From: Phallusia mammillata
Lineage: Eukaryota
Direction of reading: 5' to 3'
DNA: 64,000 bases
Assembly: GCA_965637545.1 (NCBI GenBank)
Contig: OZ281496.1
Span: forward strand, 24,366,001-24,430,000
Position numbers and translations under genes: made by a program. The notes beneath the pieces were generated by a model, which was given only the letters and a program-made list of their open reading frames with translations, searched no databases and was not told the DNA's origin. Below, one piece after another: positions 9,201 through 62,001 of the stretch (position 1 is the stretch's first letter; the number at the start of each line of letters is the position of its first letter).

Positions 9201-12200
9201 GCTTTGGCTTTTACCAAGGAACAGTTCACGGCGGTCAATGGCTACTCCAATGAGTTTGTGGTAAGTGCTTTCAACCAACGTTCTAAAATCGCACCGGAAT
9301 ACATCAATTATAAAGTTGAGGGTTAATGTACCACACTCGATATTAGTCCCATTACCTCCAGTCAAACCTATATATCGTTCAAAAAAAGATTTGGCCCATA
9401 ACTCACATTGACATTAGACATGCACATAAATTGTCATCAAATAAAAAGTACCTAATGTATATAAAGTATACATTTTTCTTATTTGCGAACTATCTGTTTA
9501 AAACCACCATTCTATGCGTTTTACGTATCACACGCCGTGTTTATAATTTCGTGGCGCAATAAACTTCTTGTCGTTTACAAACTTAATTTTATTAACTTAA
9601 TTATCTACCAGGGATGGGGTGGTGAGGACGATGACATGGCAGTTAGAATTGAAAACATGAAATTCAACATTTCGCGTTTGAACGCAACTTACGCCAGGTA
9701 CACTGCAAACCAAATTGGGTAGAGACAGTATGAAAAAGTTGGGTTTGCAAAAATACACCCAAGTGTTTTGGGTTTACACTGTAAAGTAAGTCAAATAAAT
9801 GCCCAAATTTTGATTGCTACCCAAACTTTTATGTGTACCCAACCGCATTTACCCAAATAATTTGGGTTCAAGTGATAAAGTAATGCAAGAATGTACCTAA
9901 ATTATATTGTTACCCAAATTTTGAAGTGTACAAAACTGAATGTACCCAAATGATTAGGGTAAAAATGATAAAGTGCCAAAACTATTTTCAAAAAAAGTCA
10001 GTTGTTGCAAGTAAATTTGCATATTTTATCAAACGAATACTTTCTATAAGCGTGTCTCTTCAATGCTTACAGATTATTGCAACCGCAAACTATAAAAAAG
10101 CCACTTTGATAACTGCTTTGGCATGGTTCTCTTACTGATGCTTACCCATTTGCAATCAATATGCGAAAAAAAAACACTCGCTACGGCGTTAATGCGTATA
10201 CGACGAACTACACGATTTTAAACAAGCCGTCAGTAATGTCCTGAACGTTCTCTGCTTTCATTGCAGGACATAATAATTTGGTCCAAAAGGATAAACACAA
10301 ATTTAAATGTGAATATTAAGGGATTATCCAATCAAACGTTGTTTCAAAAAACACATGAAAAAGGTGATCCGTTAAATTGTCTTCTGAAGCTTCGGACAAA
10401 GTGCCACGTTTAGGGCGTGGCTGGTGGCAAAAGCCCGCGAACGGGATCACGTGTGTTTGTTGCAAGCGACTATGGTGTTTGTCGTGTTTAGTCGGTTTTT
10501 GTACTGAATGTTTTAGCTTAATTTAGGTTAGAATAAAACAATTTAAAAATGGATTCATCGAATAGCGATGTTATCATAATTGTCAAGGAAGCGTTACAAG
10601 GTGTTTCTGAGGAAAAGACACAAAAGATATGCGACATTTTTACAGGTAAATATTTTTTGTTAGAATAACTTTGTAATTGGTCCTTAAACTATAATACTTT
10701 ATAGAAAGCCTGGTTGATGGAAAATCCTTAGCAGTGGCTAATTTCAGTTTGCTAGTTCAAACATTTGCGGAGGTTCCAAGAGGGCTCCTGTTGAGAATTT
10801 TTAACAAGTTTTCTGAAAAACGTGAAAGGGAAAAGATAGAAAGGGCATTGCATATGGACACATCAGTAGATTCTGACTCTGACACAGTACCACTAACAGA
10901 CAGTGACATCACAGAAGATAGCAGTCTGACTTTAAACACATCTGATGAGTTTTCCAACAGTAGTAGTGATGAAGTGCCATCCTCATCCCACCATATTTTT
11001 ACACCAAATTTGTGCAAACCAGTGCCAAAAGTGTTTCCAATTGAATTGTGTCGATTCGGATTTTATGCCAAAGAAGTTTTAAGAACTGGAAAAATTACAG
11101 AATGTGGTACCAGTGAAATAACAACAGAATTAATCACAGTAATGAAAAGATATAAAAGGCAAGTTAAGTGTTTTCCAAATTTATCATGCCTAAAAATGGC
11201 CTAACAGTATTGTATTATGCAGATACCCAACTGCAGAAATAAGAAGAAAGGTTATTCAAGAATTTGTCAAGATTGGTAAAGCAACAGTTGGTTTAGATGA
11301 AGATGCAGCAAAGGTAAAACCAACAGCAGTGATTGTCACTAATTTTATTTTTATGTAACTTCCACCATTGTTTACAGAAATTCTGGCTCCGAAAAGTTAG
11401 TTCCAAAATAAATTCCCAAATGAAACAGATGAGAAAGTTATCTAGTCCACCCAAGTGTTTTTCAAAAAGAAAATACAACAACATTTCTGGGACAGCAGAC
11501 ACAACATGTGTTAAGCGTAGAAAATCATCAGTGGGACTTCTAGAAACAGAATCCAATGAGGAACAATTTAAAGAAGACAAAGAAGTCAGTATCAGTTGTT
11601 GTAAGCTTTGGGTCAACTACCAGTTTGCTAATGTTGATGTTAATATGGTTAACTGACAGAATTAAAACAATCACATTTTTGTATCAATTGACATTTTACT
11701 TTTGTTAGATTTTACAAGATGAATTTAAAAAACCATCTGTCTGTCGCAATAAGCGAACAATTTGTGAAAAAATGGAGGCAACATTTTTGTATCGGTGCAA
11801 CTACATACTAAACACTAAACCATCACCAAATGAGCTCATGGAACAATGGCCTGCACTTTTTACTTATGATGAAGTGAGTGTTATCTAGATTCTTTAAAAT
11901 GCTATAAAACAGTGCCAGAATTTGTTGGATTACAGGCATACGGTAGTGCTAAACTTTTTTGAACTTAAGTTCTAACTTGCTAAAATTCCAAATGTTTTTT
12001 TCTTTTCAATAGAAACAAACCATAATTAACAATGTGTTTTTTAGTTGATCCGTGACTTCAAAAGACTGCAGCCCACTCTACCTTCAGAGACAGAAATAAG
12101 GAATGTTGGAGATGTATTATTTACAAAAGTAATTAAATTTGCATCTGAAAAACCTTACAAATCAGCAAATCTTAAGCGAATTCTCCAAATGCTTCCTGAT

Positions 12201-13953
12201 GAAATGGACAAGTTTAATGGTAAGTGGAAATATATTGTGATTGAACTTTCCATAACAAATGATCATTTCTATACATTTGTTTTGTGAACAGATCTGAGTT
12301 TTGCTGTTGGAATTCTGTTGGTGTGTTGTCTACTAACAGGAAATACAAAACGAGAGTTTAGCCAGGACCGTTACCTATTGGATATATGCCCAGTATGTAA
12401 ACATTTTCACACCATTTAATGTATGTACACAGCATAACATTTCATATGTTGCAGATTAACACATCGTTTGAAGACACAAAAAATGCATTTGGTGATCGCC
12501 AGCAGCCAATTCTTGTCATATATGGAGATGCTGCTGATCCACAAAAGATACTGCTTTTTGCTGAAAACCAGGTTATTCTGCAAACCACCAATGTTGTAGA
12601 AGGGCTACTATCCTTGTTTGCATGTTACTTTGTCTTTAATTACGAATATTGCCCTCATGTTGTGAAAGCACTCTATTTTCTTCAAACATATCTTCTAAAA
12701 ATTGGCAACAACTCTCCATATCATTCTGTTAAAGAACTCAAACTAAGTTTGGAAACATCTCAGTAATTTTCATGCATTTTGCCCATTGTGACGTGTACAG
12801 TATTTGATTTTCTAACTTTTTTGGTGGAAATGTAGGGTTACACTTCGTTTCTGTTCATTATTTAAAAAAATTGTGATGTGACCATGTGAAATAAAACGGA
12901 AATGGTCGTTCAGCTTATATGTTTGTGTGGGTTCAGTGAGCAAATATTTGCTTGGGTTTATACGTTTTTACCAAAAAAAAGCAAAACCTTAATTAACGCA
13001 AAAAATAGTAAACTGGGAGTTCACCCAAAAACATTTGGGGTTTACTTTGCCCAATGTTTTTAGTTGGGTTTCTCAACCAATTTACCCAATTAAATTGGGT
13101 GATGACAACCCATTTTTTTGGGTTGTGTTAGCCCACTTTGGTTTACAGTGTATGATTTATTGACCTAACCCTACCGGTATTATAAATCACGATTTAAGTC
13201 TTCAGAATGTTTTTGCAAAGCAATTTTTGATTTATGTCGTACGCCTACACTTGGCTCGAACCTGAAAGTATAAGCCAAAAACCCGATTTAAAAAATAAAA
13301 TAATGTCCGTTTTGGACCAGCAGATTTGATTTACAGTGGAAAAGTACGTCTATGGTGGCCTATGAGTGCCACCTAAAAACATGACATTAAAATAAAAAAA
13401 TAAACTTAAAATTAATTTGCAAACTTAAATAAAAATTGATTTGTGAATTCAAAATGATTCGAAAACAAAAAGTAAATTGAAATGTTATGTGGTCTGCAAC
13501 CAGTTGGTATCAACCCGGTTTCATTTAAACAAAAGCCCGAGTCTATAAACCAGACAATATAAACTCAACGTTAAAATGCATCCCTGTTGGAATGTGTTAA
13601 CCTGCAGTATTCACAGGTTTAAAATGATTAAACACAAACCTGACAAGGGAAACCCGATCAACCCCCATCGAATGGACCGTGGAGGTGTGTCACGTGATCG
13701 TATAAAAGAAGACGGCCTGAGCTCTTTGAACACATTGTCTGTTGACGTCATCAAGTACATGACGCACACACGGTTGAAGTTAAAGACCTTTAGGCCAAAA
13801 TATGTCGAAGAAGTTCTTAACCGTCCTCAATCGATTTTCTTCGGAAACAACAAATTTGTTTTCAAGTCATTTGATCTCACGGGTCTTGGTGCCAGGATTG
13901 CAGAAAGACGTAAGATGGAAAAGGACGCCAAACGACGGAAGAAAATGTTTTAG
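6260..13953 (+). CDS. B4GALT: Beta-1,4-galactosyltransferase family (GT7) type II membrane glycosyltransferase, ~458 aa; exons 6260-6646, 7548-7762, 8240-8337, 8456-8572, 9124-9260, 9612-9697, 13617-13953
   Basis: N-terminal TM, CPSISPLLKGP, VIVPIRDREMHL, FNKGQLMN, FHDVD (DxD), GWGGEDDD and KMIKHKPDKGNPINP motifs. Exon phases are consistent if intron 3 is GC-AG. Subfamily not assignable by eye. Confidence 0.9.
9701..13150. mobile_element. CACTA/EnSpm (CMC)-type DNA transposon, 3450 bp, no transposase seen
   Basis: Termini CACTGCAAACCAAATTGGG ... CCCACTTTGGTTTACAGTG; TA duplicated on both sides (9699-9700, 13151-13152); dense ACCCAA/TTGGGT subterminal repeats in both orientations at both ends. 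Confidence 0.85.
10549..12766 (+). CDS. Transposon-borne SAM-domain (SAMD3-like) accessory protein, ~533 aa; exons 10549-10645, 10705-11158, 11223-11313, 11378-11584, 11709-11873, 12045-12219, 12292-12392, 12455-12766
   Basis: Eight exons sum to 1602 nt with no internal stop. SAM-like N-terminus (VDGKSLAV...VPRGLLLRIFNKF), then YPT, W...K..N..K, TF.YR....WP.LF and C-terminal LLSLFACYFVFNYEY...YFLQ motifs that I recognise from SAMD3-like proteins (from memory, not searched). Confidence 0.7.
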
Positions 13954-48000: not shown

Positions 48001-48968
48001 AGAAAAACTTGATGTCATATAGGCAAATATATATATTTTCAAGTTTGCATTGACCGTTCCCATAGTTATCAGCGTATATATAGAGTTTTAGGCGTAGCAA
48101 TGTATGGAAGTCAGGACAAGATCTCAGTGTTTAAAGCGTTTTGTACCTAACGTACATGCTGTAACATAGGAGCACGTCAGGACACATCGGTTCAGCTTGG
48201 GTCCATCGGTGTTCAACGAACACCCAGGAGACATACGTGCACCACGCTTCGTAGTAATATTATCACATGTTCCGGTTTTCGTTTTGATCATACATTTCCG
48301 TGCGTTTGTTGACCGTTCAATAGATTATGGTATGATTCTTCTGCAATGAGCATAAACATCGGCGTGCTAAAATATATGGGCGGTAGTGGTTATCCTGTAG
48401 AGTTTATGGCGATGCCCTTGTATAAACAAACGCAATAATTACAAAATTAATGACTTGATTATATTGCGGGCCCGTGTTTGTACGAGAATAGAATGATTTA
48501 AATTGTAATTGGTTTCATTCTTGGAAATACAGTTCGTCGAACATTATGCGTTTAAACGTCATGCCAAATGAAACTTTGACGTCGAGATAACCAGTAAGCC
48601 ATTTTTCACGGTCTTGTAAGTTTTTTTTTCTACGAACTTTATGCTTTCCACTCAACCAATCAAGCAATAAAACCGTAAAAACATCCGTATATGATTTGTC
48701 TGGGACATTGCATCAGGCAAAAAGAGTTCAAACGAAAGCCTGAAGCTATTTGGTTTGATATAGCGCCCAGACTTAAAACAACAAACCAGGAAGGTGGGTG
48801 GAACCGCAGTTAGAATCTCGCGTCTCCCACGAGGAAATACACACGCAACTGGTCTTCAAGTTTTTGTATATCAACAGCATATGGTTTCCTTACCACGTTC
48901 ATTTTCCTTATGTTCCAGAACGTACTGTTTTTTGTCGCCAGTAATCGCCACACTTAGTAACTAAAACC

Positions 48969-51900
48969 ATGTGGGCGTCGCGCATCTTTCTGCTGCTCGT
49001 CGCGGTGATGACGTCACAGCCGGTATGGGGTCACGTGAGGTTGACCTTTCCGCCGGCTCGAACATACCAGCTTGATTTCATGGACAACGTACGGACAACA
49101 GGCCCTTGCGGTTTTCCGGCATATGCAGGTACATAACTGATGAGAGTTGCAAATGGCCTAAAATTTGGGTCCGAACTGTATTGTAGAAACACAAGCCCGA
49201 TTTCATGGAAAAAATAACGCGCGAATCAGACCCGAAACTTGGTGAAAACGGCGTAAAAATGGTGACAAGTGTAAGGGCCCAAATCAAGCCAGTTTTGTTA
49301 AAACTTATGCCCCGACTCGACCCAAAAACCCCGGCCCGACTTACAATTTTGACTTGATGTTAAAACACCTTGCCAAATTTCCAGAACAAACTGATACAAA
49401 TGTAAAAGCTTTAAGGCAATATATGATAAGCAAGCTGTAGACAGTGCACACTGTTTCAACCCATACGATCTCATCAATGCACAAAAAATAGGCCGTATAA
49501 CTTTAAAAATCTGTTCGCAATGATCTTATCCGGTTTCATCGCTCATGCCAGAGATAAAAATTAGAAAATACGATAAGGGGCTAAATGAACGCTTTTTGGC
49601 ACTAATATGCAGTAAACCTCGGTTCATACGGACTCGTTTGGACCCAAAAACTTGTCCGGATTAGTACCTCAGGTTTTGTCCCAATTAGGCACAGGTCCGG
49701 ATTAACCGAATCCGATTTAACCGAGATTTACTGTATTTCAAACCTATTTCATAAATGTATTTTTCTATTCAAATTAGCTCTTACAGTCTACGGTTTCGTT
49801 TGTCAGCATAACGTAGGATGTAGGCTACTGAACGTGGGTCAGAATTCAATTATCCTCAGGATCTCAGCCTCCTCATTTTTGCCAAATCACGACGCCAGGC
49901 CTAATTCCGCGTATTGTGTCAGAACCAGCGTCTCACCAAAGCCCGCTGCGAGCGTGACATCTTGTTTTCTCCATGTTTTAAGCAGTAATATTTGCAACAC
50001 AATGACAATCCTAAGCGCTTGCAAACAAGTGTTCTTACATGACCCGATAGACATAACGTTTGCATGGTGAAATATCTACCGCTTTCTCAGGAATTCAAAA
50101 ACACAATGCGATGATTTGCATGTTTTTGTTGCAAATTAGTCAGTTCAAAGATCAAATTTGCAGACAAAAAGAGCCCTCACTTGACACAATGCCACGATTG
50201 GTTGTTTTTTAGCCTGTGTTCAGTCCATGGTTATACCGAGCGTTTAGTGACATTTTATATGTTTTTAGGAGCACCAAGGACCACTTTGGTTGAAGGAACG
50301 TCTTTGCGAATTGAATGGCATCTGGCTTATTCACACAGAGTAAGTCATAGTGGTGTGCAATTGAAATAAGCTTCTGCATCTTTTTGATTTTTTACGCCTA
50401 CTTTATGCCTAGTAAAATGCACAGTTCCCATGATTGTTTTTATTAGTTGATATTACGGAGAGGCAATAATGGCATCTTTTCATGTAAAAACTATAATCTT
50501 CTAAAGAGCAACTATTTTCCATTTAGGGAGGCGCGGAGCTTCAAATTATCCAGGAAAATCCCACTCGAGTATTGGCAAGTCTTACCCACGGACGGTTTCT
50601 TTTCCAAAACGACTCTACGTAAGTAAAACTCAAGGCATGCAAAAGACACAAATCCACAAAATCAACATTTGTCAATTTTACAGTCGCCAATACGCCGATG
50701 TTGTTTTACCTGTCGGTTTGACGTGCAACAATTGTTCGATTCGATTGTTACGTCAGGCTTCGGAATGGTCTGCTGCCTACCGATTCTGGAGCTGCGCTGA
50801 CGTCACTATCCTATCTCACCCCGATTCAAGCAATGTGACATGTGCCACCCCTCCACCACCGGTTACCAGCCCAGCAGGACCAGCCGGTGAACCGGAGCCA
50901 ACCAACGAACCAGAGCCAGCCAACGAACCGGAACCAACTAACGAACCGGAGCCAACACACGAGCCGGAACCAACCAACGAACCGGAACCAACTCACGAGC
51001 CGGAGCCAACCCATGAGCCGGAGCCAACACAGGAACCCGAACCTACACACGAACCGGAGCCAACAAATGAACCAGAACCAACCAATGAACCGGAGCCAAA
51101 CAACGAGCCTGAACCTTCTCCTGAAACAGGCACTTCCGGTAGTGGCAACAACGTCTGCTTTCCAACTACAGCATTGCAGCCAGCGCTGTGTTATGCAGGA
51201 AAATGTCTTAACGGAGGCACCTGCGATTCCGGCACTGGAAAATGCAGTTGCGTGAAGCTGTTCTCTGGAGATCGGTGTGAAAATTATGGTAAGTGCGTTT
51301 CTCTTGGATGACTTTGGCCACATGTACCACAATTTGCGCTCTTGTATGGTTTCGACCAAGACTGATAACAGATCAAACTAGGTTTTCACCGTAAAATTGG
51401 ACAATAAGATGGCATATCTACTTGCGATCATGATATTGATCTGACATACTGCACCACATAGTTCACTTGTGGCTAACGGGTGTTGTGTAAAACTCCACAG
51501 TTATGTACCATTTGTGGGAAACAGGAATGTGGGAATTTGCTTTTGTCTTCAGCAACAATAGTGTTTTGTAAAACATTTGCAGCAAAATCATGCACATTTA
51601 ATCCCCATCAACTTAACTTTAACATTTAAAACTTTTTTTTTTTAAAACCATTCGTATTTAGGCATCTCTGGATTCCAAATTTAAGTTAGGTTTAAGTCTC
51701 TTTGCTCATTGTTGTTTCATTTTTTCCTACACAGACCAATGTTGGAATGATGCGGATTGTGGCAATGGAAAGTGCATTGACACCAGGTCCACCACCTTCC
51801 CCAAGCTGCTCTGTTACTGCAATCCCGGTTACCATGGTGACAAGTGTAATAAAAGTAAGAACATTTTCTTGTATGTTTAGTAGGTAAGACTAGTTTTTTA

Positions 51901-54900
51901 TTGACTAGTACAATATTGGCCTAAATACGCTTTGGTGTAACCGTTAAGCCAAAACCCTGTATTTCCAAACCATCTAAGAATTAGGTACTGTGTTCTAACC
52001 CAGTTTCTCGGCGGTGCGCCTAGGTAGCTAGCCTGATGCGCCCCAAAATGAGTTAATTAATATGATAAGATCCTTTAAGTGAAATGACTTTTCCCTGGGG
52101 TAAAAAAATTAAGAAACACTGCTTTAACCAAATAAATTGCCAAATGACAAATACAAGGCTCGTAAAATAAATCGTATCTTTTTCCAGCCTCTCAGGTCGA
52201 GATCCAAAGCAACTATTCGAGCAACAGCGAGTACTGGAGCCGCGAACTTCTCCCTGGCAGAGTCTATCTCCACTGGAAGCTTCTCAGCAACAACCAAGAG
52301 ATTGAAATTGCCATAAGAGCCCAGACACTCAGCTGGGTGGGAATTGGCTGGAGACCCCGTAGTTTGACCAATCAATGTCGAGGCCAGTTCCCGACTTTGG
52401 AGAGCAGACCAAGTATCGATGCTTCAAGAGCTACATGGGTTGACAGTTTGAAGAATGAGCCAATCACAGCCGTAAGTTGTTTGTCGGACTCCCAAGTGTA
52501 AGTATCAACATAATTGTCTATAAAGCAGTTGTGTTTTAGAAAAGTCCATCTGAGGATCCGGAAATTTCTATCGAACAAGGCCTTGAAAGCCAGATTGAAG
52601 CCAATTGCAACGGTGGGCCCAATCCCTCACCTGGGGGACCAGCAGGCTCTCCGGAACCAACGCACGAACCAGAGCCGGAACCAACCAATGAACCCGAACC
52701 AACACACGAGCCGGAACCAACCCACGAACCAGAGCCAACTCATCAACCAGAACCGGAACCAACCCATGAACCAGAGCCAACTCACGAGCCAGAACCGGAG
52801 CCAACCCATGAGCCAGAACCAACCCACGAACCGGAGCCGACCAACGAACCGGAACCAACACACGAGCCGGAGCCGACCAACGAACCGGAACCAACTCATG
52901 AACCAGAACCAACCCACGAACCGGAGCCGACCAACGAACCGGAACCAACACACGAGCCGGAGCCGACCAACGAACCGGAACCAACTCATGAACCAGAGCC
53001 AACCCATGAACCAGAGCCAGGTCCAACCAACGAACCAGAACCGGGACCAAGCGGGGAACCAGCACCGGAACCACAACCGGGTGCTGAACCAGGACCAGGC
53101 AGCAACAGCGGAGGAGAATTTCACGGCATGGACTGCGTTGACGTTGTTATTGGTTCAGTCAAAGGTAACCATAATTCAGTATGCTCTGGTCCACGCTGAG
53201 CAAATTTAATGACCTGGTTTTATTTTCAGATTCCCTACATCGTGTGCAGGATATGTACACACGTGATCGCTCAACCCCTCGCGCAGATAATTTCTACGGC
53301 GGCTCAGATGACATCACAGGTTCTGCTGGTTCGCAAGTAGATGGTTTCACCACGATTGCCTTCAGGAAAAGGCTTCAAGGTAATGACTAAGTTCGGCTTT
53401 TCAAGCACCTAAACCCTACCCTAAAGCGAAATGTCACATCTTCTAGCCTATGCGCAGTCCCGTTAGATTGTTATTTCAAGCATTTCACTCGAAAAGAAAA
53501 ATAAACATGGTTGCCTTCCTAGATTACGAGTGGTTCTAAATGGTTTCCAACACATATATGAAAGTTTTTCACCGTTTTAGCCATTACAATGCTGAATACC
53601 CGAGTAACTAACAATTGATTTTACGTAGCTACACACGGAAGCGATCATCCAATTGAAAACCTTCTCACCCACGTGATTTGGGCAATGGGACAAAGTATCG
53701 ACCAATATTTCCACTCTCCTCGCTCGGGTCTTGAGTCTTGCACGGCCAGCGATTACAGGTGATTTCTTGGCCATTGATTTGTTCATTTTTGTCGTCACTC
53801 ATAAAAACTATGTTTAAGATGCGAGTATAAATGGCTTTGTGCATACAGATTATAACATTATAACATAACCAGGAAATAAAAATGTCGCTTATATGACTTT
53901 TTACTAAAAGCTATAGTGGAAATGCTGTATGTAACTCTGAAATCTTACTTGAGTAACTTTACTAGTTTTTTGTAAAACTTGAAAAAAACAAAGCACCGTT
54001 TTATGCCACCTGAAATGTGCTGGGACATTTACATCTAATGTATATCTCATTGCACAACACCGTTCCATTAAATTGCCCCCGGGCAAGTGGCTGCATTTTC
54101 GTCATGTTTTTCTGGGGGATTTGCTTTGAAGTTACCTGGCCAATTTGTAACTGAACCTACATTTATTTTAATTTAAAACTCTGTGACATTTTGCCTGTTA
54201 GCAAATTTCCATTCGTTTGTCAGTAGCAAACAAGCGTATAATACCACTTATGATGGCATCCGCATTTGGAAAAACGTTTAAGAGTGAAACATGTTGCCGT
54301 TTACTTCTATTTAGGCTAATATATTTCGCATAACACTTGTGGACACTTTCATGTACTGTTTCAATAGCAATTCAAACATACCCGAGTTTTATTGACATGT
54401 AATAATCATGTATTTGTTGTTATTGTACGTGTCCCATTTGGGTTAAATGTGTGCGAGAACTAGGTACGACTTTTCGCCAATTTCTATCTCTCCTTGTGTT
54501 GCTGTACAGATTTTATCGCCACGACGAGATCAAGTATCACGGTTCTGGTAGCCAAAGAAGGGGAGTGGTCAACATGAATTTCTACGGTGGGTTACATACT
54601 GAAATTTACAGATCTTAAGCCTAATCGCAGGTTGCGAGTCAGGGCATTTTTTCAACTTTATATTTTCGTTACACAAAAACAATAAACCTAATTGAATGGT
54701 GTGTCTGCAAACAATTTGTAAGTGAAAAAAGTTTCAGATTATTATCAATTTATACGCTTTTTGCCCATTGGTCTGAGTGCGATTCAGCTTTGCCTGCGCC
54801 GGGTTTTAAACTTAGTCGGTGCTTTTTAACCATTTTAGTGGCACGAAACCCTTAAGATATTTTGTCAAAAATGTCCGAACCCCCATAAAATAACTTTGAT

Positions 54901-57900
54901 ACATGTAATACAAGTAGACTACATTGATGTTTGAATTGCTGCAACAAACCTCGGGGAACCCCTAAAGTTCACGGAGCCTCTGGGGGTATTGCACGAATCC
55001 CTCGCGTTCCGCGAAACCCCGGTTAAAGAGCTCTGGTCTAACGCCTATCACTTGTAAAAACTTTTAGAAAATGACGTTTGCGATTGGCCTTACCTTTGTA
55101 TTTGCTTATCATTAACGTTTTAAATTTACAGAAAACCCCAACCCGGCACCAACTGGTCAATGCACCAGCGTTTCACACGAGTACAAACAACCTTCTACAT
55201 GTACTAGCGAAGGTGACAACTTCGATTGCGACTATTACGCATCGTGGACCCTGAATACTGAAACCGATGTTATTGACTTCGTCCTTAAGGTAATTTATGT
55301 GTTTTAGACTCTAAGATAAGTGTTGATCAACTTTAACTATTGATACTTTTGTCTTTGCATATACTGTACTAGGTTACTTATGACAGCGCTTTTTAACCTA
55401 AGTACAAAATAAACCCAATGGCTGCATAGGGATTTAGCAAAAACGCGTTAGGTGTGATTAATGTGCAGGGTGTGTATGATAATGACACCACTGCTAAACA
55501 GTTTTGATCCTTTTAAACATATTAGTTCATAATCATGTTTTTATGGGGTTAACATTTTCATTTTACATCTGTAACCCGACCAAAAAGCCCATGTTTGTTA
55601 CTTTAATAACAAGCGTACATGGTATCACATCATACAAAGCGGGAAAATAAAGGTTAAAGTGACCTATGGAATATTGGACCATATCATATTTGATACATAT
55701 TCAAACATTCAAAACAAAATTAAAATTGATCATCTAATTTGGCCACTTGATAATGTAATGTTTTTCACACATGTATTTCTGATTTCTTAATTAAAGCAGT
55801 TCCCATGTACATGATTTGCATATATCGGCTTTAAATATCAATGCCATTTTATGTAAATTTCTTCCTACGTTGGAAATGTTTCGTTACTACGTACACACGT
55901 TAAGTGTTAACTAGCAACAGAAACAGCAACCTATCTTAAGTGCACTGGACCGAGTCCCTGCCAATTGTGTTAGGTGGATTCTTGCGTTGTGATTACGTCA
56001 GAAATGAAGTAAATATAACTATGTGGTCTGGCCTTGCAATTGTCTTTTATAATTATTGAGCAGTGGAAGCCCAATTTCGTAAGGCCCCTGTGGTAAACAA
56101 GTGCGGTTTTTCTTAGACGAAATAACAATCGTTTAAAGTTAATGTTGTTTTAACTTGAATGTATGTGCTATGACGTTTTTCCGAGTAGGTGGGTTCTTTG
56201 ATTACGTCACATAATTGCAAAATATTTATTGTAAATATACGAAAGAACCATTATATCAAGAATAACGAAAACGTAGCACAAAAATAGATTATAAATATTG
56301 TTTTGTTTTTAAGACGTGACATGGCCTTTAGTGTGTTAAAAGTGCCACTATACCGTAATGTTGAATTTCCAAATGATGTGTCAAAATGCGAATTTAAACA
56401 GTTAAAAGGGGAGGAAAAATTACTACAAACATTATTGAAAGATTTACGAAACATTTATCGTTGTGGCTCAGTCAGCCTCTTCTATGCCTTTGCTAGGCTT
56501 TTATGTGCTAGTGTTACCACAAACACTTAATCAACCACTATTTTTTATAGTCCAAACAAACCAGAGACAGGTGGATCGCTTTGGGAATCAGCGACGACAG
56601 ACTAATGCCGAATTCTGATGCAATAGTCGGTTTTATTGATAACCAGGAGCGAGCCGTTATTTCAGACAGGTAAGAAATGAACGTTTTCCCTTGGATTTAT
56701 CCAGTGTACAGACTACAGAAGCAAACAAAATTGGCAGAGGCCTATTTTCGTACTGTGTCAACAAAATTGCCTGTAGTAGATCATAAGAGAGCTTTACATC
56801 AAATAAAACCTCTACACGCCTTGGTAATCTGGAAATCGATCCGCTTGATCTTAGTTCCCTTGTCAGTGCAAGTCATGGTCCTTTTGTCGTAGCGTTGTGT
56901 CACTATCAACATTATAGCAGGACTGTTATGTTATAGTTTGCCACGTCACTTTACCTCAAAGTTGGCAGAATTTCTCTACCGTCATGAAGTGACAAGGACA
57001 CTTAAGTATCCCCTTAAGGTCTACTCCCAGGTCATCGAAGTTGCCACTTCAGTCAAATGCAGTAGCAACAGTTTATATAACACTGATGGACACGTTAGCA
57101 CCTTGGTATGCGCTCTTTATGTGCAAAAACAAAGCAGCGGTTCTTGTTTAACTGGTCAGTAGTGGAAAAGACAAACGCCCCTGGCCAGCGTTGCGTTTGC
57201 TTTTCTCCATAGTAGGGGATATGTGATCTTTACACTGTTATCAACCTTTTTATCGTCGGTTTGGAGACAACAACCAACTTTGAATTTCTTCTGACACGCT
57301 TAAAAAAATTATTCTCAGATGAAATGCGTTAAAACTGCACTATTATACCTCTTCAACAAATGCTGAACTGCACATAAAAATACACTTCCCCTTTAGACTG
57401 TGTAAATAAAGACAGCTAAAACCAAGGTCTATTTAATTTTCTTTGTTTGCAGTTTTTAGAGACTGACGATACCTGTATGTATGAAATATCTCTCTCGATT
57501 TTAACAACTTCGTGTCCACTGATTTTAAGTCATAAGCTTTTGCTTTCGAATTCTCATTTACTTCTCGTTCAAAGTGCATCTTGTTTGCACAATTTTGAAA
57601 CAAAAACTTTTTCTTATCCGTAAGGTTAATGCCGATTATGAAACATTAACGACTGGTCACAAATGCAAGCCTGTCTAATCGCAGTGGACCTTTTGATTAA
57701 TTGTTATTTGCTTTTTTAGATGGATTACAATGAGATCAAATCCACCTTTGGACGATACAGCAGACAACCTTTCTAACAAGCGTGGAAGTTACCAGAACGG
57801 CGTACTTACCATAGAGGTAGTCCACTCTTCTTAACTTACCTTTTTCATATACTTAAGCATTATATCATCAAACTATACGAGATATACTATGTGTTATGGT

Positions 57901-60900
57901 TTACTAATTTTTGTGTATTATTTTAACAGTTTTCCCGAGCCAGAGACACCCAAGACACACGTGATATTCCATTTACTGACACTTCTTGTCCATTCATGTT
58001 TTACGCCAACGGACCAACAAGCAACAACAACAATAACATCAATTACCACGATTCCAAAATCGTCAGCACCAACGGGGTAAGAACTAAGAACACAAAAATA
58101 AACGTATTTGTACTATAAACCCCATGAACTTTAAGTTGCTTAAATTGATTAACTATGGCCTTGTTTGGGGATCAAATGCATCAACAGATCTCTGAAATAA
58201 CGGAACATGCCTAAATAGGTCTTCAAATAATTGCAGCTATGGTCTTTTGTACATCGCTTAAGTACAATCATTTATCACACAATATTTCCTACGGCAATGT
58301 ATATAAAAGTTTGAAACGCATGTCTTGTGTTGCATTTCAATGGACTGGAGGCCCAAAAATTGGAAAGGCTGGAGGTGAACAAAATTGTCCAAGTCGTATG
58401 TTCAGCACCCTGGCAAAAGCCCATAAAAATTTGGTCTAAAATGTGACAAACAAATACCAATTTTTAGCTGATTTATATAGTTGCGTACGCTTGCGCCAAA
58501 AGTATTTATTTCACGTTATCACAGGTATGTATCCGCGCATGCGCAGTACAAACGGTGGTGGAAAACACTTTGGCCGGTCAAGTTCGTCTCACGGCAAGAA
58601 CCTTTGCAGACGAACTTGCCGACTCGTCGACACAGGAATATCGGAATCTCAAAACTGAAATGGAAACTACAGTAAGTTTATGTAAAATTTATTTGTTAAT
58701 AAAAAAAAAACGATAACTGAGCTCCAGAAAGTCAATTTCGATCTGTAAGGTCTTGTCTGTGCAGCTGCATGGTTACAAAACCTTGTCCTTACAGGGTAGT
58801 ATAGCCAGGTATTTGTTACAATGCAAAACTGTAGCAAATCGAATGATTTAATTACCCCAAACTGGGATACCACAAATAAGGTCCTAGAATCATATTTAAA
58901 AAGTCGCTAAAGAAATATTTAAAATTGCTTTTTATTATCATGAGATACGTTTTGGCTGTTGGATGCATTCAGATTTTCTAACTTGGTTTATTGACTTATT
59001 ACTTCACCGATCCAATATTACTTGTTAAACACTATTTTTGGTCATTTTGCTAATCCCTTTTCTTGTTGTATAGATTGCTACAGCCTACCGGAAAGCGAAC
59101 TTCGTTAAAGAATCGGTTTCAGATGTGTTGGTCACTGTTACCGGGTTTAGTGCTGGAAGTGTAGTGGTCAATTACAACTTGACTGTCACTCATAGCGACG
59201 AAAGCATCTCAGAAGATCAACTGGCGGTAAGATACAGTGTTGTAAACATGTACCTTGTTTAAATAAGCTATAACTGTACTGTCAGACATAATATATAACC
59301 AAGCAAAAACTGCTGAATGAGCAATACTAGGTTATATACAGTGATGGGATTCAATTTTTTGTCGGCCGGTTCTATCACAAAAGTCATATTTTTCAGCCGG
59401 TTCTGTTGCAAAAAGTACATTAACAGTAACCAGTAATGCTAACCGGTTCGCTGACCTCATAAAATTTCGTGAGATTTCCGGCTAAATCCCACCACTGGTT
59501 ATATAACTTGTTTGTACATTATAAAATAACTGATATAATATCCTGCGCTGCAACCAGTTTTCAATTGTAAGGAGGGTCACATATTTTGTAACCCACATGG
59601 TTTAGTTGATTTTATTTCGCTTGGTGAAAGAACACATAGCGACACAATTGCATTGAACAATCACTTAGCTAGAAATAGCTGAATACCGTTAAAACGTTAT
59701 GGGGCACAGAATAGGGCACATCTTGTGGATCATGACTAAACGCGTTGCAACTACCCTCAAGATTCATGAACTTCTTGGAGTTTTTTGTCTAAAAATCATG
59801 TGTAAATAACCTATTGGTTTGGGAAGTCCAAAAATCACATATTTGTGTGACTTCTGTAGATGGCATTGGAACAAGCCTTGAAGGAAGTGATTGCCGAAAA
59901 TAACGGAACCCTTGGAGGAGCGTCTGATACCAGTGTCGACTCCGTCAGTATTTCTTCCGGTACGTACATGTTTAGAACTAGATTTTTTAAAATAAGAGTT
60001 GGAGGCCCGAAATTATAGGAGTTTGACTGGGCACATGTTATAGTTGACTTTGGACATGTATATTACGGTACGCCAGGCTCATTGAAGGCGTCATTCCGAA
60101 TTCGACGGGTTCACCGCTGAGCCTGCGTAGCTCGATTGGATGAGCGCGAGTCACGGAAAGACTCCCGTCGGGGGTCAAATCCCACCGCAGGCTAGATTTT
60201 TCTAGCCCACGCTTTGTCATATGGTGAATGCGTGGTGACCGGCTGATTCGTTATGACACCTTCAATGGGCCTGGTGTTCTGTGATTTACATAAGAGTGTG
60301 CCGTGATCGCTGGCTTCAGGGCTGATCCCAGTCGTGAATTGGCTGTTTTTAATTTTAACTTTAAAAGTGGTTTAGGCTACATCTGCAAAACGAATATTGA
60401 CCATTACAGTTATTATGTTTTACGAACAGCTTGCAATATATTGGCCTACTGAATTTGACGCGAAAAATAACAATAGATAACAAATGCTGGCTCATTGCTA
60501 ATCGAAAAGCGTAGCCACAGACGTTTCAGATTTTAGACCATATCACATCCTGGATAATTGCAAAAACTGTTTTTTTCATCCTGTAATCCTATTTAGTATA
60601 GAAGGCTACTCAACAATAAATTCCCTTTTAAAAGTATATTCCGGGTGTTCGAAAAAAGCTTACAAACAAGACTGCTTTCAAACAGGATTCTCAGATAACG
60701 TTAATTTGTTTTTAGCTATATCCGATGACGCTGCTACGACTATCGCCCCAACGACAAGCGCACCAACAACAAGTGCACCAACAGGACTTAAGGATTGGGA
60801 GATTGCAGTTATATGTGTTTGTGTTATGGGGGCCGTGACAATTGCTGCTGCGGCCGCGGCTGCTTGTATAAGAAAGAAAAATGCCCAGAGTAAGTACCTA

Positions 60901-62001
60901 CAAAGAGTTACGTCTTTTTGTACTCAATTTATGACGCTTCACATCTTTCTTTTCGCAAATGAAATAAACTTATAGAAGCCATGATGAGCTAAAGGAAGTC
61001 GGCAATCTTTGTTGCACTGCGGACCGTTTTTGAAACCGAAATTTTATCGCCAACCGGCACTCAAAAAACTAGCAATAAAAACACATAGTTTAATTTATAA
61101 TCCCTGGAAAGCACAGGCAAAATGTTGGAAAAAAACGTACAACGGCCCGGTAACAAACATTTCCAGCAATTGCCGACCATTGAGCTAACGAACCAACAAA
61201 AATCTGGTCATAATTAATTCGCCAGTTTAATAAGACCTTAAAAATTGGCTTAACATACAATGCTATGTGTAAGTGTAAAAATTTACCTCTCAAGTCTAAT
61301 TGGTTGAAGATTAACTTATACTTAAAAAGTTGCTCACATTTTCTTCCGCTGTTGGTCTTTGGGCAGATTACTTTGTTTGGTGTTGTTTTTTCCTGTACCA
61401 TTGCAAGCCTAAAAAATAACATTGTCTCAAAACAATTTTGCCGTTGTTTCTTACTTTGACTATTTTTCGTTTCAGAAAACTTCCAAGCTATCCCGATGAA
61501 AACAGATAACTCGAACAGTGAAGGCCACCACAATCCTATAGTGAATGAATATGAAAACTTTAAAGAGGTTGGTAAAAATGTTACACACTTGTAACGGATA
61601 TTGTTAAACGTTTTAGGCAGCGCTGCGCACAGTGTTAGTGCTATGGTAAAAGGACGGTTAGGTTAGAGGCCTGGTATATGGGGAGAATTTAGAGACAGTG
61701 TATAAAACTGATTGGGTAAATGGTAATAGTGTGAAGCTAGGAATCTAAATTGACACTACAACCGTGTTAGATTAAAATTCTGCTATTAAACATCATGGTG
61801 TTTACATTGTACAGCAAAGGGTTAATTAATCAGTCCATTGCAGGGCAAAGTATTTTGTTGAGTTTACTGTATGACATATACGCATTATATGATTTCCTAA
61901 ATACGCATTTGTTGTTGTTGCAGAGACCAAGTCCATCTAGTTCAGTTCATGACACCGACTCCGAAAAGGAAAAGAGTTTGAAACCAGAACAAGTTGTCTA
62001 A
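48969..62001 (+). CDS. ~1192-aa type I membrane protein: signal peptide, N-terminal-His LPMO-like domain, EPEPT linker, 2 EGF, DOMON (split by second linker), DOMON, SEA, TM, cytosolic tail; exons 48969-49128, 50269-50339, 50527-50618, 50684-51288, 51735-51854, 52188-52471, 52540-53164, 53230-53379, 53629-53758, 54510-54586, 55132-55289, 56551-56669, 57720-57816, 57930-58076, 58525-58671, 59074-59226, 59860-59959, 60716-60889, 61476-61567, 61924-62001
   Basis: All 20 GT-AG exons join in phase (3579 nt). Motifs: VWG|[35 protein letters not shown], two 6-Cys EGF repeats, WVGIGWRP...FHGMDC...YTRDRSTP...[22 protein letters not shown]...[41 protein letters not shown]. Confidence 0.88.
50889..51116 (+). 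repeat. Coding minisatellite, 18-bp unit, (EPEPT[H/N/Q])n linker 1
   Basis: About 12 units visible in the translation. Confidence 0.9.
52652..53040 (+). repeat. Coding minisatellite, 18/24-bp units, (EPEPT[H/N])n linker 2, with a 90-bp higher-order duplication
   Basis: About 20 units (14 with His). Block at 52825 recurs at 52915. Confidence 0.9.
59339..59497. mobile_element. 159-bp hAT MITE
   Basis: TIR CAGTGATGGGATT / AATCCCACCACTG; perfect TSD GTTATATA. Confidence 0.85.
60056..60291. mobile_element. Inverted-repeat element enclosing a tRNA-like core; partial second copy of one arm at 45135-45203
   Basis: Arms CCAGGCTCATTGAAGGCGTCAT... / ...ATGACACCTTCAATGGGCCTGG, extendable to ~60 bp with mismatches. 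No clear TSD. Confidence 0.6.
60121..60193 (+). pseudogene. tRNA-like 73-nt cloverleaf (tRNA pseudogene or SINE head)
   Basis: Acceptor GCCTGCG/CGCAGGC, D stem GCTC/GAGC, anticodon stem GAGTC/GACTC with non-canonical loop ACGGAAA, degenerate T arm GGGGTCAAATCCC, T5 run 4 nt downstream. Confidence 0.7.

What the first reader, a model, noticed from the sequence alone, without database searches (positions are those of the whole stretch)
48969..62001. Surface-anchored LPMO-like copper domain fused to two putative heme DOMON domains: a possibly self-reducing oxygenase
Seen: after a 21-aa signal peptide the mature chain would start with His (VWG|HVRLTFPP). A second His cluster (WHLAYSH) and a terminal strand YRFWSCADV follow. 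Downstream are two DOMON domains that each keep a Met and a His at heme-ligand-like positions (FHGMDC/IKYHG and [13 protein letters not shown]), then SEA, TM and tail. Established: LPMOs (AA9/10/11/15) and X325/Bim1 proteins bind Cu through an N-terminal His brace and end in a similar (E/Q)x(F/Y)xxC(A)D strand. LPMOs need an external electron donor, and in fungi that is the Met/His-heme cytochrome domain of cellobiose dehydrogenase, which has a DOMON-type fold. Inference: one polypeptide joins the copper site and its electron relay on the cell surface, tethered by long flexible linkers. If the host is a tunicate, cellulose tunic remodelling is an obvious candidate role; chitin, or copper uptake as in Bim1, are alternatives. 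I recall similar uncharacterised EGF/DOMON proteins from other invertebrates, so the novelty is the functional reading rather than the gene's existence.
Basis: partly seen in the sequence, partly recalled or inferred. Interest (0 to 1): 0.85.

Follow-up and report, generated by a model that had tools for sequence, protein, structure and literature searches.

The report
Animal LPMO-like copper domain fused to cytochromes
This expressed 20-exon gene is the orthologue of the uncharacterised fly gene nahoda, a cell-surface protein found across invertebrates that joins a small copper-binding domain of the polysaccharide-oxidising (LPMO) type to two heme-type DOMON domains, so it may carry its own electron relay, though no enzyme activity has been shown.

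Summary
Window 48969-62001 (+) holds a 20-exon gene for a 1192-aa protein. Every intron is GT-AG. Spliced contigs from four public runs that look like RNA confirm the first ten junctions.

The protein order is: signal peptide, His-first domain of about 130 aa, acidic Pro/Thr repeat linker, two EGF, DOMON1 split by a repeat of about 200 aa, DOMON2, SEA (GSVVV), TM, tail.

It belongs to the 'DOMON-like domain-containing protein nahoda' family. That family runs from sponges and Trichoplax to arthropods, molluscs, echinoderms and hemichordates.

- **N-terminal domain:** it has an LPMO fold, closest to the insect AA15 structure 5msz (Z 13.3; profile E 1.6e-6). His22, His76 (aligned with AA15 His91) and Phe142 (aligned with axial Tyr184) are conserved. 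The domain lacks about 60 residues that AA15 has, about 37 of them before AA15 residue 60.
- **DOMON domains:** both keep the Met/His pair. It is invariant in DOMON1. Dopamine beta-hydroxylase, which binds no heme, lacks the Met.

The reading 'copper domain plus heme relay' is therefore supported. 'Self-reducing oxygenase' is not, because the protein has no electron-source domain and no activity is known. The tunicate-cellulose idea has no support.

A 2019 paper mentioned the DOMON/EGF/LPMO_10 grouping in passing.

The parts
48969..62001 (+). Whole coding region. 20 exons: 48969-49128, 50269-50339, 50527-50618, 50684-51288, 51735-51854, 52188-52471, 52540-53164, 53230-53379, 53629-53758, 54510-54586, 55132-55289, 56551-56669, 57720-57816, 57930-58076, 58525-58671, 59074-59226, 59860-59959, 60716-60889, 61476-61567, 61924-62001. 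Product 1192 aa.
   Evidence: Hand-built model with all introns GT-AG and phases consistent. Junctions of exons 1-11 are seen in spliced contigs of 4 runs. Exons 11-20 rest on homology.
48969..49031 (+). Signal peptide, aa 1-21. Predicted cleavage is VWG|H.
   Evidence: Hydrophobic leader. The -3/-1 rule holds in 102 of 102 orthologues. SignalP was not run.
49032..50816 (+). LPMO-fold histidine-brace domain, aa 22-152, spread over exons 1-4. His22 codon 49032-49034. His76 codon 50334-50336. Phe142 codon 50784-50786. The C145-A-D147 strand ends the domain.
   Evidence: Family profile against PDB: 5msz_A (AA15), E 1.6e-6, with H76 aligned to His91 and F142 to Tyr184 (PMC5823890). Model of a 54%-identical orthologue has pLDDT 94. 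VIA gives Z 13.3 to 5msz, and the top 22 chains are all LPMO or LPMO-like. The Foldseek top 50 are all LPMOs. Pfam LPMO_10 matches 32 of 35 members and BIM1-like 27 of 35.
50817..51188 (+). Acidic Pro/Thr-rich linker 1 (PEPT(N/H)E units). The 18-bp tandem repeat lies at 50889-51106.
   Evidence: (compositional match to Trypan_PARP).
51189..51854 (+). Two EGF modules: the end of exon 4 (51189-51275) and exon 5 (51735-51854).
   Evidence: Pfam EGF / EGF_2 / EGF_Teneurin on the exon pieces. EGF_TEN hits in orthologues.
52188..54586 (+). DOMON1, aa about 350-772. The N-half is exon 6. A PEPTHE repeat insertion of about 200 aa lies in exon 7 (tandem repeats 52651-53073). The C-half is the end of exon 7 plus exons 8-10. 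Met641 codon 53128-53130. His756 codon 54538-54540.
   Evidence: Pfam DOMON on exons 6 and 8. M641 and H756 are invariant in 103 orthologues. The orthologue model (pLDDT 84) matches the DBH DOMON at Z 14.1, heme-b EbdC at 12.1, the AA8 cytochrome 6jt6 at 11.2 and the CDH cytochrome 1d7c at 10.9.
55132..58076 (+). DOMON2, aa about 785-945, exons 11-14. Met843 codon 56605-56607. His936 codon 58047-58049.
   Evidence: Pfam DOMON on exons 12 and 13. M843 is kept in 100 of 100. A His stands at the H936 column in 65 of 100 and in the adjacent column in a further 19. In the profile-PDB alignment DBH has Leu at the Met column, and Met65 of 6jt6 aligns with the family Met.
58525..59959 (+). SEA domain, exons 15-17. 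The GSVVV autoproteolysis-type motif is at 59155-59169 (aa 1022-1026).
   Evidence: Weak Pfam SEA hit on exon 15 (E 0.013). SEA is found in orthologues. The motif is read directly from the sequence.
60802..60870 (+). Single transmembrane helix, aa about 1108-1130, followed by RKK.
   Evidence: Read directly from the sequence.
60871..62001 (+). Cytoplasmic tail of about 62 aa (end of exon 18, exons 19 and 20) and the stop codon. It contains a YENF (YxxPhi-like) motif.
   Evidence: The tails listed for the few orthologues my crude TM filter picked out (6 of 104) look unalike.

Best explanation
The gene is the orthologue of Drosophila nahoda. It encodes a type I cell-surface glycoprotein. Its outermost module is a compact LPMO-fold domain related to AA15. 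That domain most likely binds one copper ion through the amino terminus and side chain of His22 plus His76, with Phe142 at the axial position. Behind it, on acidic Pro/Thr-rich linkers, two EGF modules and a SEA stalk, sit two DOMON domains that most likely each hold a b-type heme through a Met/His pair, as the AA8/CDH cytochromes do. The most likely working model is an extracellular electron-transfer chain. The hemes take electrons from an outside donor, such as ascorbate or a transmembrane cytochrome b561/CYBDOM partner. They pass them to the tethered copper site, which then does redox chemistry at the cell surface. The first candidate for that chemistry is O2/H2O2-dependent oxidation of a matrix glycan, chitin-like by kinship with AA15. 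Shown here: the gene model and its transcription, the domain order, the fold class, and conservation of the ligand residues. Inferred: metal and heme binding, electron transfer between domains, and the terminal reaction.
For: The gene is expressed and spliced as modelled for exons 1-11. The His-first domain plus DOMON architecture is conserved in more than 100 proteins. The LPMO relationship rests on three lines. First, the family profile hits the AA15 structure 5msz at E 1.6e-6, with the brace His and the axial residue aligned (residue roles from PMC5823890). Second, a high-confidence model (pLDDT 94.1) matches 5msz at Z 13.3, rmsd 3.0 A over 132 of 133 residues, followed only by other LPMO families and LaX325. 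Third, Pfam LPMO_10 and BIM1-like match most members. His is found at position 1 after a canonical signal-peptidase site in every orthologue. H76 is 99% conserved, E135/W136 100% and F142 95%. For the DOMONs, Met641/His756 are invariant and Met843 is kept in all 100 best hits. A His stands at the H936 column in 65 of 100 and one column away in 19 more. The fold matches heme-b DOMONs. DBH, which binds no heme, has Leu at the Met column, while Met65 of an AA8 cytochrome aligns with it. A published analysis says this Met/His pair marks heme DOMONs and is absent from DBH and from sugar-binding DOMONs (PMC10691727). AA8 cytochromes are established electron donors to LPMOs (PMC5960967, PMC13575373).
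Against: There are no biochemical data for any family member, and I found no functional paper on nahoda. The chain has no electron-generating module, so the relay needs an unknown partner. The copper domain is about 60 residues shorter than AA15, with about 37 of the missing residues before AA15 residue 60. From general knowledge of AA10/AA15 structures this is the L2 region that forms much of the substrate-binding face. X325/Bim1, another compact LPMO-like family, shows no polysaccharide cleavage (PMC7924993). At -2 from the axial residue the family has Tyr140 rather than the Glu/Gln seen in AA15, AA9 and some AA10. The family occurs in echinoderms, hemichordates and Trichoplax, where chitin is not a prominent matrix (my own knowledge, not tested). 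The structure models are of orthologues (about 54% identical for the N-domain), not of the window protein itself. I could not get model coordinates, so brace geometry and Met-His distances were not measured.
Confidence: 0.5

Rival explanations
1. Copper acquisition or cupric-reductase receptor, working like Bim1/X325. The histidine-brace domain captures Cu(II) at the cell surface. The heme DOMONs reduce it to Cu(I) for hand-over to a Ctr1-type importer. No glycan is oxidised.
For: The domain has the compact size of X325. It matches Pfam BIM1-like over nearly its whole length (profile 2-138 of 140 in P0078; 27 of 35 members). LaX325 is a strong structural match (Z 11.1). The protein is membrane-tethered, as Bim1 is. 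Bim1 works in copper uptake with Ctr1 and shows no polysaccharide activity (PMC7924993, PMC7529816). The scan notes a GPI-anchored paralogue in this genome (s1-388474, unchecked).
Against: By sequence profile and by structure the nearest solved relative is the active chitin/cellulose LPMO TdAA15A, not X325. No X325 chain came up in the profile search even at E 10. The Asp ligand on a Gly-rich loop that fills the fourth copper site in X325 (PMC7529816) could not be located or excluded here. Cu(II)-Bim1 is hardly reduced (PMC7529816), so a fused reductase is not part of the known Bim1 mechanism.
Confidence: 0.2
2. A general extracellular heme redox protein, for example a ferric reductase or a matrix cross-linking helper. 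The DOMON cytochromes are the working parts and the LPMO-like domain only binds a ligand or the matrix.
For: The number of DOMONs varies from about 2 up to 7 matched stretches across the family, which suggests they are the expandable functional unit. DOMON-bearing CYBDOM proteins are ferric reductases in plants (PMC10784552, PMC10784544) and are proposed as such in insects (PMC10691727). The same genome is said to encode a secreted 5-DOMON array (s1-380852, unchecked).
Against: The brace residues His1 and H76, and the F142 and CAD strand, are as strictly conserved as the heme ligands. That is hard to explain for a mere binding module.
Confidence: 0.15
3. A non-redox adhesion or signalling glycoprotein whose LPMO-like and DOMON domains have lost their cofactors.
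For: EGF, SEA, mucin-like linkers and a single TM are typical of adhesion or sensor proteins. DBH shows that a DOMON can exist without heme (PMC10691727).
Against: All putative metal and heme ligands are conserved from sponges to arthropods.
Confidence: 0.08

Closest known systems
Drosophila nahoda and its orthologues ('DOMON-like domain-containing protein nahoda', also annotated as uncharacterized, EGF-like domain-containing or 'cell surface glycoprotein 1')
   Same: Same architecture: His-first domain, two EGF, a DOMON split by an acidic repeat, further DOMON(s), often SEA and TM. Identity is 45-54% in the N-domain and 36-45% in the DOMON region.
   Different: This copy has long PEPT(H/N)E linkers. 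Orthologues vary in DOMON number and C-terminal end. No family member has a described function.
AA15 lytic polysaccharide monooxygenases (TdAA15A, PDB 5msz)
   Same: N-terminal His after the signal peptide. The second brace His aligns (H76 with His91). The axial aromatic residue aligns (F142 with Tyr184). The C-A-D strand is shared. Same beta-sandwich, Z 13.3, 24% identity (PMC5823890).
   Different: About 130 aa against 195. About 37 of the missing residues lie before AA15 residue 60, and two later insertions of about 12 residues each are also absent. Tyr stands where AA15 has Glu at -2 from the axial residue. Fused to EGF, DOMON, SEA and TM instead of being a free or CBM-linked enzyme. Activity unknown.
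X325 / Bim1 LPMO-like copper proteins of fungi (LaX325, PDB 6ibh/6ibj; Pfam BIM1-like_dom)
   Same: Compact LPMO-like fold with a histidine brace. Tethered to the cell surface. Pfam BIM1-like matches near its threshold over the full domain. Z 11.1.
   Different: No sequence-profile hit to the solved X325 chain. TM anchor rather than GPI. The Asp ligand was not identified. X325 carries no DOMON or cytochrome.
AA8 / cellobiose dehydrogenase-type cytochrome b domains, and the heme DOMONs of CYBDOM proteins
   Same: DOMON fold (Z 10.4-11.2 to 6jt6, 1d7c, 4qi3). Met/His pair conserved. The family Met aligns with Met65 of 6jt6. These domains are known electron donors to LPMOs (PMC5960967, PMC13575373).
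   Different: Here they share a chain with the LPMO-like domain and have no dehydrogenase or cytochrome b561 partner domain. Sequence similarity to AA8 is marginal (E 0.58). The nearest solved DOMON by score is the heme-free one of DBH.

Membership tests
LPMO superfamily (AA10/AA15-type, Pfam LPMO_10) | Mature chain starts with His after signal-peptide cleavage | tested here: met
   VWG|H22. The -3/-1 rule holds in 102 of 102 orthologues and His fills this column in 107 of 107. This is a prediction only: SignalP was not run and there is no proteomics.
LPMO superfamily (AA10/AA15-type, Pfam LPMO_10) | Second histidine of the brace at the homologous position | tested here: met
   H76 aligns with TdAA15A His91 in the profile alignment (role of His91 from PMC5823890). 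99% conserved.
LPMO superfamily (AA10/AA15-type, Pfam LPMO_10) | Axial Phe/Tyr on the last strand | tested here: met
   F142 aligns with Tyr184 of TdAA15A. 95% Phe in the family.
LPMO superfamily (AA10/AA15-type, Pfam LPMO_10) | LPMO beta-sandwich fold | tested here: met
   Orthologue model has pLDDT 94. The top 22 VIA chains and the top 50 Foldseek hits are all LPMO or LPMO-like. The window protein itself could not be folded, because a spliced protein has no reference.
LPMO superfamily (AA10/AA15-type, Pfam LPMO_10) | Pfam gathering score for LPMO_10 (23 bits) | tested here: inconclusive
   P0091 scores 27.2 bits and P0125 scores 23.4 bits, both passing. Most full-length orthologues score 18-20 bits. 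The window's exon pieces alone give no hit.
LPMO superfamily (AA10/AA15-type, Pfam LPMO_10) | Extended flat substrate-binding face (L2 region) | tested here: inconclusive
   About 37 residues of AA15 before its residue 60 have no counterpart. That this is the L2 binding face is from my own knowledge. The surface could not be inspected, because no coordinates were available.
LPMO superfamily (AA10/AA15-type, Pfam LPMO_10) | Copper-dependent oxidative cleavage of a polysaccharide | not testable with these tools
   Needs protein expression and product analysis.
X325 / BIM1-like copper proteins | Histidine brace plus an Asp on a Gly-rich loop as fourth ligand | tested here: inconclusive
   The brace residues are present. 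Invariant Asp residues exist (D36, D39 beside the GPCG loop; D147), but none could be mapped onto the X325 Asp without coordinates or a sequence alignment (PMC7529816).
X325 / BIM1-like copper proteins | Pfam BIM1-like_dom gathering score (27 bits) | tested here: inconclusive
   P0078 scores 26.6 bits, just below the cut-off. The best E-value among isolated domains is 1.1e-6. The database lists PF20238 among precomputed hits for three orthologues. Most are below the cut-off.
X325 / BIM1-like copper proteins | GPI anchor | tested here: not met
   This protein ends in a TM helix plus a tail of about 62 aa.
Heme-b DOMON (AA8 / CDH cytochrome / CYBDOM type) | DOMON fold | tested here: met
   Pfam DOMON on the exon pieces. 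The orthologue model matches DBH, EbdC, 6jt6 and 1d7c at Z 10.9-14.1.
Heme-b DOMON (AA8 / CDH cytochrome / CYBDOM type) | Met and His axial ligands conserved | tested here: met
   M641/H756 are kept in 103 of 103. M843 is kept in 100 of 100. A His stands at the H936 column in 65 of 100 and one column away in 19 more. The Met column holds Leu in heme-free DBH and Met65 in 6jt6. The criterion comes from PMC10691727. Equivalence of the His to the CDH His rests on its position near the C-terminus only.
Heme-b DOMON (AA8 / CDH cytochrome / CYBDOM type) | Bound heme b with a cytochrome spectrum | not testable with these tools
   Needs protein.
nahoda family | Colinear architecture and significant similarity over the N-domain, EGF and DOMONs | tested here: met
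   BLAST of the model against family members: the N-domain reaches E 3.5e-45, and colinear HSPs cover the EGF and DOMON regions.

The most novel reading that the evidence does not exclude
nahoda-family proteins are natural single-chain fusions of a working LPMO and its cytochrome electron relay. They would be conserved from sponges to hemichordates and arthropods. As membrane-tethered enzymes they would oxidise a cell-surface or matrix polysaccharide, drawing electrons through their own heme DOMONs from ascorbate or a cytochrome b561 partner. That would be a previously unrecognised animal LPMO class with a built-in redox wire.
Probability: 0.22. Interest if true: 0.85.

Novelty: new variant of a known kind. 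Interest (0 to 1): 0.62.

Why it matters
LPMOs need outside electron donors, and AA8 cytochrome domains are the best-known protein donors. In the fungal systems I read about they sit on a separate protein (CDH, PDH or AA8-CBM). I found no described natural protein in which an LPMO-fold copper domain and heme-type DOMONs share one chain, though my literature search was limited.

Here that fusion is ancient and widespread in invertebrates, including model and pest insects. The fly orthologue, nahoda, has no known function. If the copper site is catalytic, this would be a second animal LPMO lineage beside AA15, with its own wiring. It would bear on cuticle and matrix biology and on pest control. 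If it handles copper instead, it would be an animal counterpart of fungal Bim1, with a reductase attached. Both options can be tested directly in Drosophila and with recombinant domains.

Tried and rejected
1. **Retrieving the window's own spliced protein from the protein collection.** Three searches did not return it. Whole-protein Pfam, folding and exact look-ups therefore had to use orthologues and exon pieces.
2. **Pfam on the four N-domain exons separately.** No hits, because the pieces are too short.
3. **phmmer of exon 1 against PDB.** Nothing.
4. **DOMON1 profile against PDB.** Only low-complexity matches caused by the PEPT insertion. The DOMON2 profile was informative instead.
5. **Tandem paralogue in the window.** None found.
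6. **Conserved cytoplasmic sorting motif.** My crude TM filter picked out only 6 of 104 orthologues, and their tails look unalike, so nothing can be concluded.
7. **Tunicate-cellulose reading.** Rejected as unsupported, given the taxonomic spread. The organism's name is coded by the tools. The N-domain is nearest to Gordionus and Saccoglossus, and the DOMON region is nearest to Saccoglossus.
8. **H71 as the brace histidine.** Rejected in favour of H76 on the AA15 alignment.
9. **Literature on nahoda / CG12781 function.** Only gene-list mentions.

Full report
**Observation**

The window has no N runs. I read the + strand between 48969 and 62001 and built a 20-exon model. Every intron is GT-AG and the phases are consistent. 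It gives a 3579-nt ORF and a 1192-aa product.

I laid Logan contigs from four runs of three studies on 48900-54800. The runs carry a guessed RNA label or none. They held about a third of the stretch's sampled words, which fits exons making up about 39% of it. Depth sits on the exons. Nine joints coincide exactly with my exon 1-10 boundaries. A loose end after 54586 reads straight into exon 11. The gene is therefore transcribed and spliced as modelled up to exon 11. Exons 11-20 rest on splice consensus, colinear similarity to orthologues and an orthologous locus in a related species.

**Anatomy**

| Region | Residues (aa) |
|---|---|
| Signal peptide | 1-21 |
| His-first domain | 22-152 |
| PEPT(N/H)E linker | about 153-268 |
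| Two EGF modules | about 270-349 |
| DOMON1, with a PEPTHE repeat insertion of about 200 aa in one loop | about 350-772 |
| DOMON2 | about 785-945 |
| SEA (GSVVV at 1022-1026) | 946-1079 |
| TM | about 1108-1130 |
| Cytoplasmic tail | about 62 residues |

Pfam run on single exons recovers EGF twice, DOMON for both domains and a weak SEA hit. The linkers are 18-bp tandem repeats at the DNA level.

**Family**

A phmmer search with exon 6 against 1.84 billion representatives mostly returned exon-sized fragments. It also returned about 14 full-length proteins in which the DOMON lies about 240 residues from the N-terminus. BLAST and phmmer of my N-terminal 155 residues against them gave E values down to 3.5e-45.

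Two word-index searches restricted to the N-domain then returned more than 100 proteins with the same architecture. NCBI calls several of them 'DOMON-like domain-containing protein nahoda', which makes them orthologues of Drosophila nahoda. Others carry the names uncharacterized, EGF-like domain-containing or cell surface glycoprotein 1.

The taxa seen are insects, crustaceans, chelicerates, myriapods, collembolans, molluscs, annelids, a nematomorph, Patiria, Holothuria, Antedon, Saccoglossus, Glandiceps, Trichoplax, the sponge Sycon and one green-alga record, Bryopsis. No vertebrate protein appeared. The lists were capped and length-filtered, so that is not proof of absence.

The window's own protein could not be retrieved. 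A relative's locus on a 1.05-Mb eukaryotic contig in an ENA metagenome assembly (L001) has the same exon order. It keeps VQG|[36 protein letters not shown] and ELKYHG.

**N-terminal domain**

- **Signal-peptide cleavage.** Across orthologues the residue aligned to window His22 is His in 107 of 107 BLAST alignments. The residues at -1 and -3 obey the signal-peptidase rule in 102 of 102.
- **Conserved residues.** H76 is 99% conserved, H71 93%, C47 and C145 100%, C122 and C125 97%, E135/W136 100%, Y140 97%, F142 95% and D147 98%.
- **Pfam.** On full-length orthologues Pfam gives near-threshold LPMO_10 and BIM1-like hits. On 35 isolated domains, 32 match LPMO_10 (best E 6.4e-9) and 27 match BIM1-like (best E 1.1e-6) at E no higher than 0.01.
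- **Profile against solved structures.** A profile of alignment A1, which includes the four window exon pieces, hits one solved structure significantly. This is the AA15 LPMO of Thermobia, 5msz, at E 1.6e-6. Family 'hlayaH' lies on 'HIQAPH' and the final strand lies on 'EEYRNCADIAI'.
- **Residue equivalences.** The AA15 paper states that His1 and His91 hold the copper and that Tyr184 is the axial residue (PMC5823890). So window H76 corresponds to His91 and F142 to Tyr184. H71 corresponds to AA15 His86, which is not a ligand.
- **Fold.** An AlphaFold2 model of the closest orthologue domain (P0125:34-166, about 54% identical to the window domain) has mean pLDDT 94.1. VIA-align against 48,161 chains ranks 5msz first, at Z 13.3, rmsd 3.0 A, 132 of 133 residues and 24% identity. 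AA16, AA11, AA10, AA13 and LaX325 (Z 11.1) follow, and the top 22 are all LPMO or LPMO-like. The Foldseek top 50 are all LPMOs. ESM-Atlas neighbours are BIM1-like and LPMO_10 clusters.
- **What is missing.** The domain is about 60 residues shorter than AA15. About 37 of the missing residues lie before AA15 residue 60. From general knowledge of AA10/AA15 structures this is the L2 region that builds much of the substrate face.
At -2 from the axial residue the family has Tyr140, where AA15 has Glu.

**DOMON domains**

Met641 and His756 (DOMON1) are invariant in 103 orthologues. Met843 (DOMON2) is kept in 100 of 100. A His stands at the H936 column in 65 of 100 and in the adjacent column in a further 19.

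A model of an orthologue's DOMON1 (pLDDT 84.2) matches five structures:

| Structure | Z |
|---|---|
| DBH DOMON (4zel) | 14.1 |
| Heme-b subunit of ethylbenzene dehydrogenase (2ivf_C) | 12.1 |
| AA8 cytochrome of Coprinopsis PDH (6jt6) | 11.2 |
| Nxr gamma subunit (7b04_C) | 11.2 |
| CDH cytochrome (1d7c) | 10.9 |

These values come, and Foldseek agrees.

The DOMON2 profile hits DBH at E 5e-8. At the family's Met column DBH has Leu. A weak alignment to 6jt6 puts the family Met on Met65.

A published comparison states that the CDH Met/His heme ligands are conserved in animal CYBDOM DOMONs. It also states that they are missing from DBH and from sugar-binding DOMONs (PMC10691727). The window's DOMON2 also fits that paper's SxDxxM motif. 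Heme binding is therefore a well-founded inference, not a result.

**Mechanism**

The evidence supports a surface-tethered histidine-brace copper domain on the same chain as two heme-type DOMONs. AA8 cytochromes reduce LPMOs in fungi (PMC5960967, PMC13575373). An intramolecular or neighbour-to-neighbour relay is therefore the most economical reading.

The chain has no flavin, PQQ or cytochrome b561 module, so it cannot be 'self-reducing'. It needs ascorbate or a partner such as a CYBDOM protein.

What the copper does is open. Kinship with AA15 favours glycan oxidation. The truncated domain, the BIM1-like resemblance and the membrane tether keep a Bim1-type copper-handling role alive. X325 and Bim1 show no polysaccharide activity (PMC7924993, PMC7529816). 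I could not inspect coordinates, so the brace geometry and a possible X325-type Asp ligand remain untested.

**What is already known**

The gene family is annotated but uncharacterised. Searches for nahoda and CG12781 returned only gene-list mentions.

Voshol et al. [quoted passage not shown] A 2026 preprint lists BIM1-like and DOMON signatures among unassigned LPMO candidates. I found no paper proposing or testing the copper-plus-cytochrome reading. The library does not cover subscription journals.

One is a GPI-anchored LPMO-like protein with two DOMONs (s1-388474). The other is a 5-DOMON array (s1-380852). I did not check either.

**Verdict**

This is a known but unstudied family, read here as a new variant: an LPMO-like copper domain naturally fused to heme DOMONs on an animal membrane protein.

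Noticed in passing
window 50889-51106 and 52651-73: The second coordinate range should read 52651-53073. Both linkers are 18-bp tandem repeats encoding PEPT(N/H)E. A similar acidic repeat splits DOMON1 in most orthologues (Trypan_PARP-like compositional hits), so the insertion site is a conserved family feature although its sequence is not.
   Followed up: partly
window 50829, 51124, 52243, 52399, 52433: Single-base differences between the window and transcript contigs of some runs (A>G, C>T, G>T). These are probably allelic variation between individuals. Two of them fall in the coding linker.
   Followed up: no
window 51391-51562 (intron 4): One run (X7) has a 172-nt contig on the minus strand inside intron 4, with 5 mismatches. 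It may be a repeat or a transposon-derived transcript from elsewhere in the genome.
   Followed up: no
L001:8700-13900: A 1.05-Mb contig in an ENA metagenome assembly (ERZ21736675) carries an orthologue with the same exon order but shorter introns. Exon identities range from about 37% to 63% in tblastn. This is a eukaryotic animal contig inside a metagenome.
   Followed up: partly
P0055 (Bryopsis sp. record, 1293 aa): A green-alga record holds a divergent family member: His1 is kept, the H71 column holds N, and CALVD replaces CADV. It could be contamination, horizontal transfer or a wider distribution of the family.
   Followed up: no
window 61476-61567 (exon 19): The cytoplasmic tail contains [12 protein letters not shown], with a YxxPhi-like YENF motif. 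My crude TM filter picked out only 6 of 104 orthologues, and their tails look unalike.
   Followed up: partly
window 9701-13150: The scan's index carries a first-reader note of a CACTA-type transposon with a SAM-domain gene in this window (s1-411019). It is unrelated to this gene and I did not examine it.
   Followed up: no
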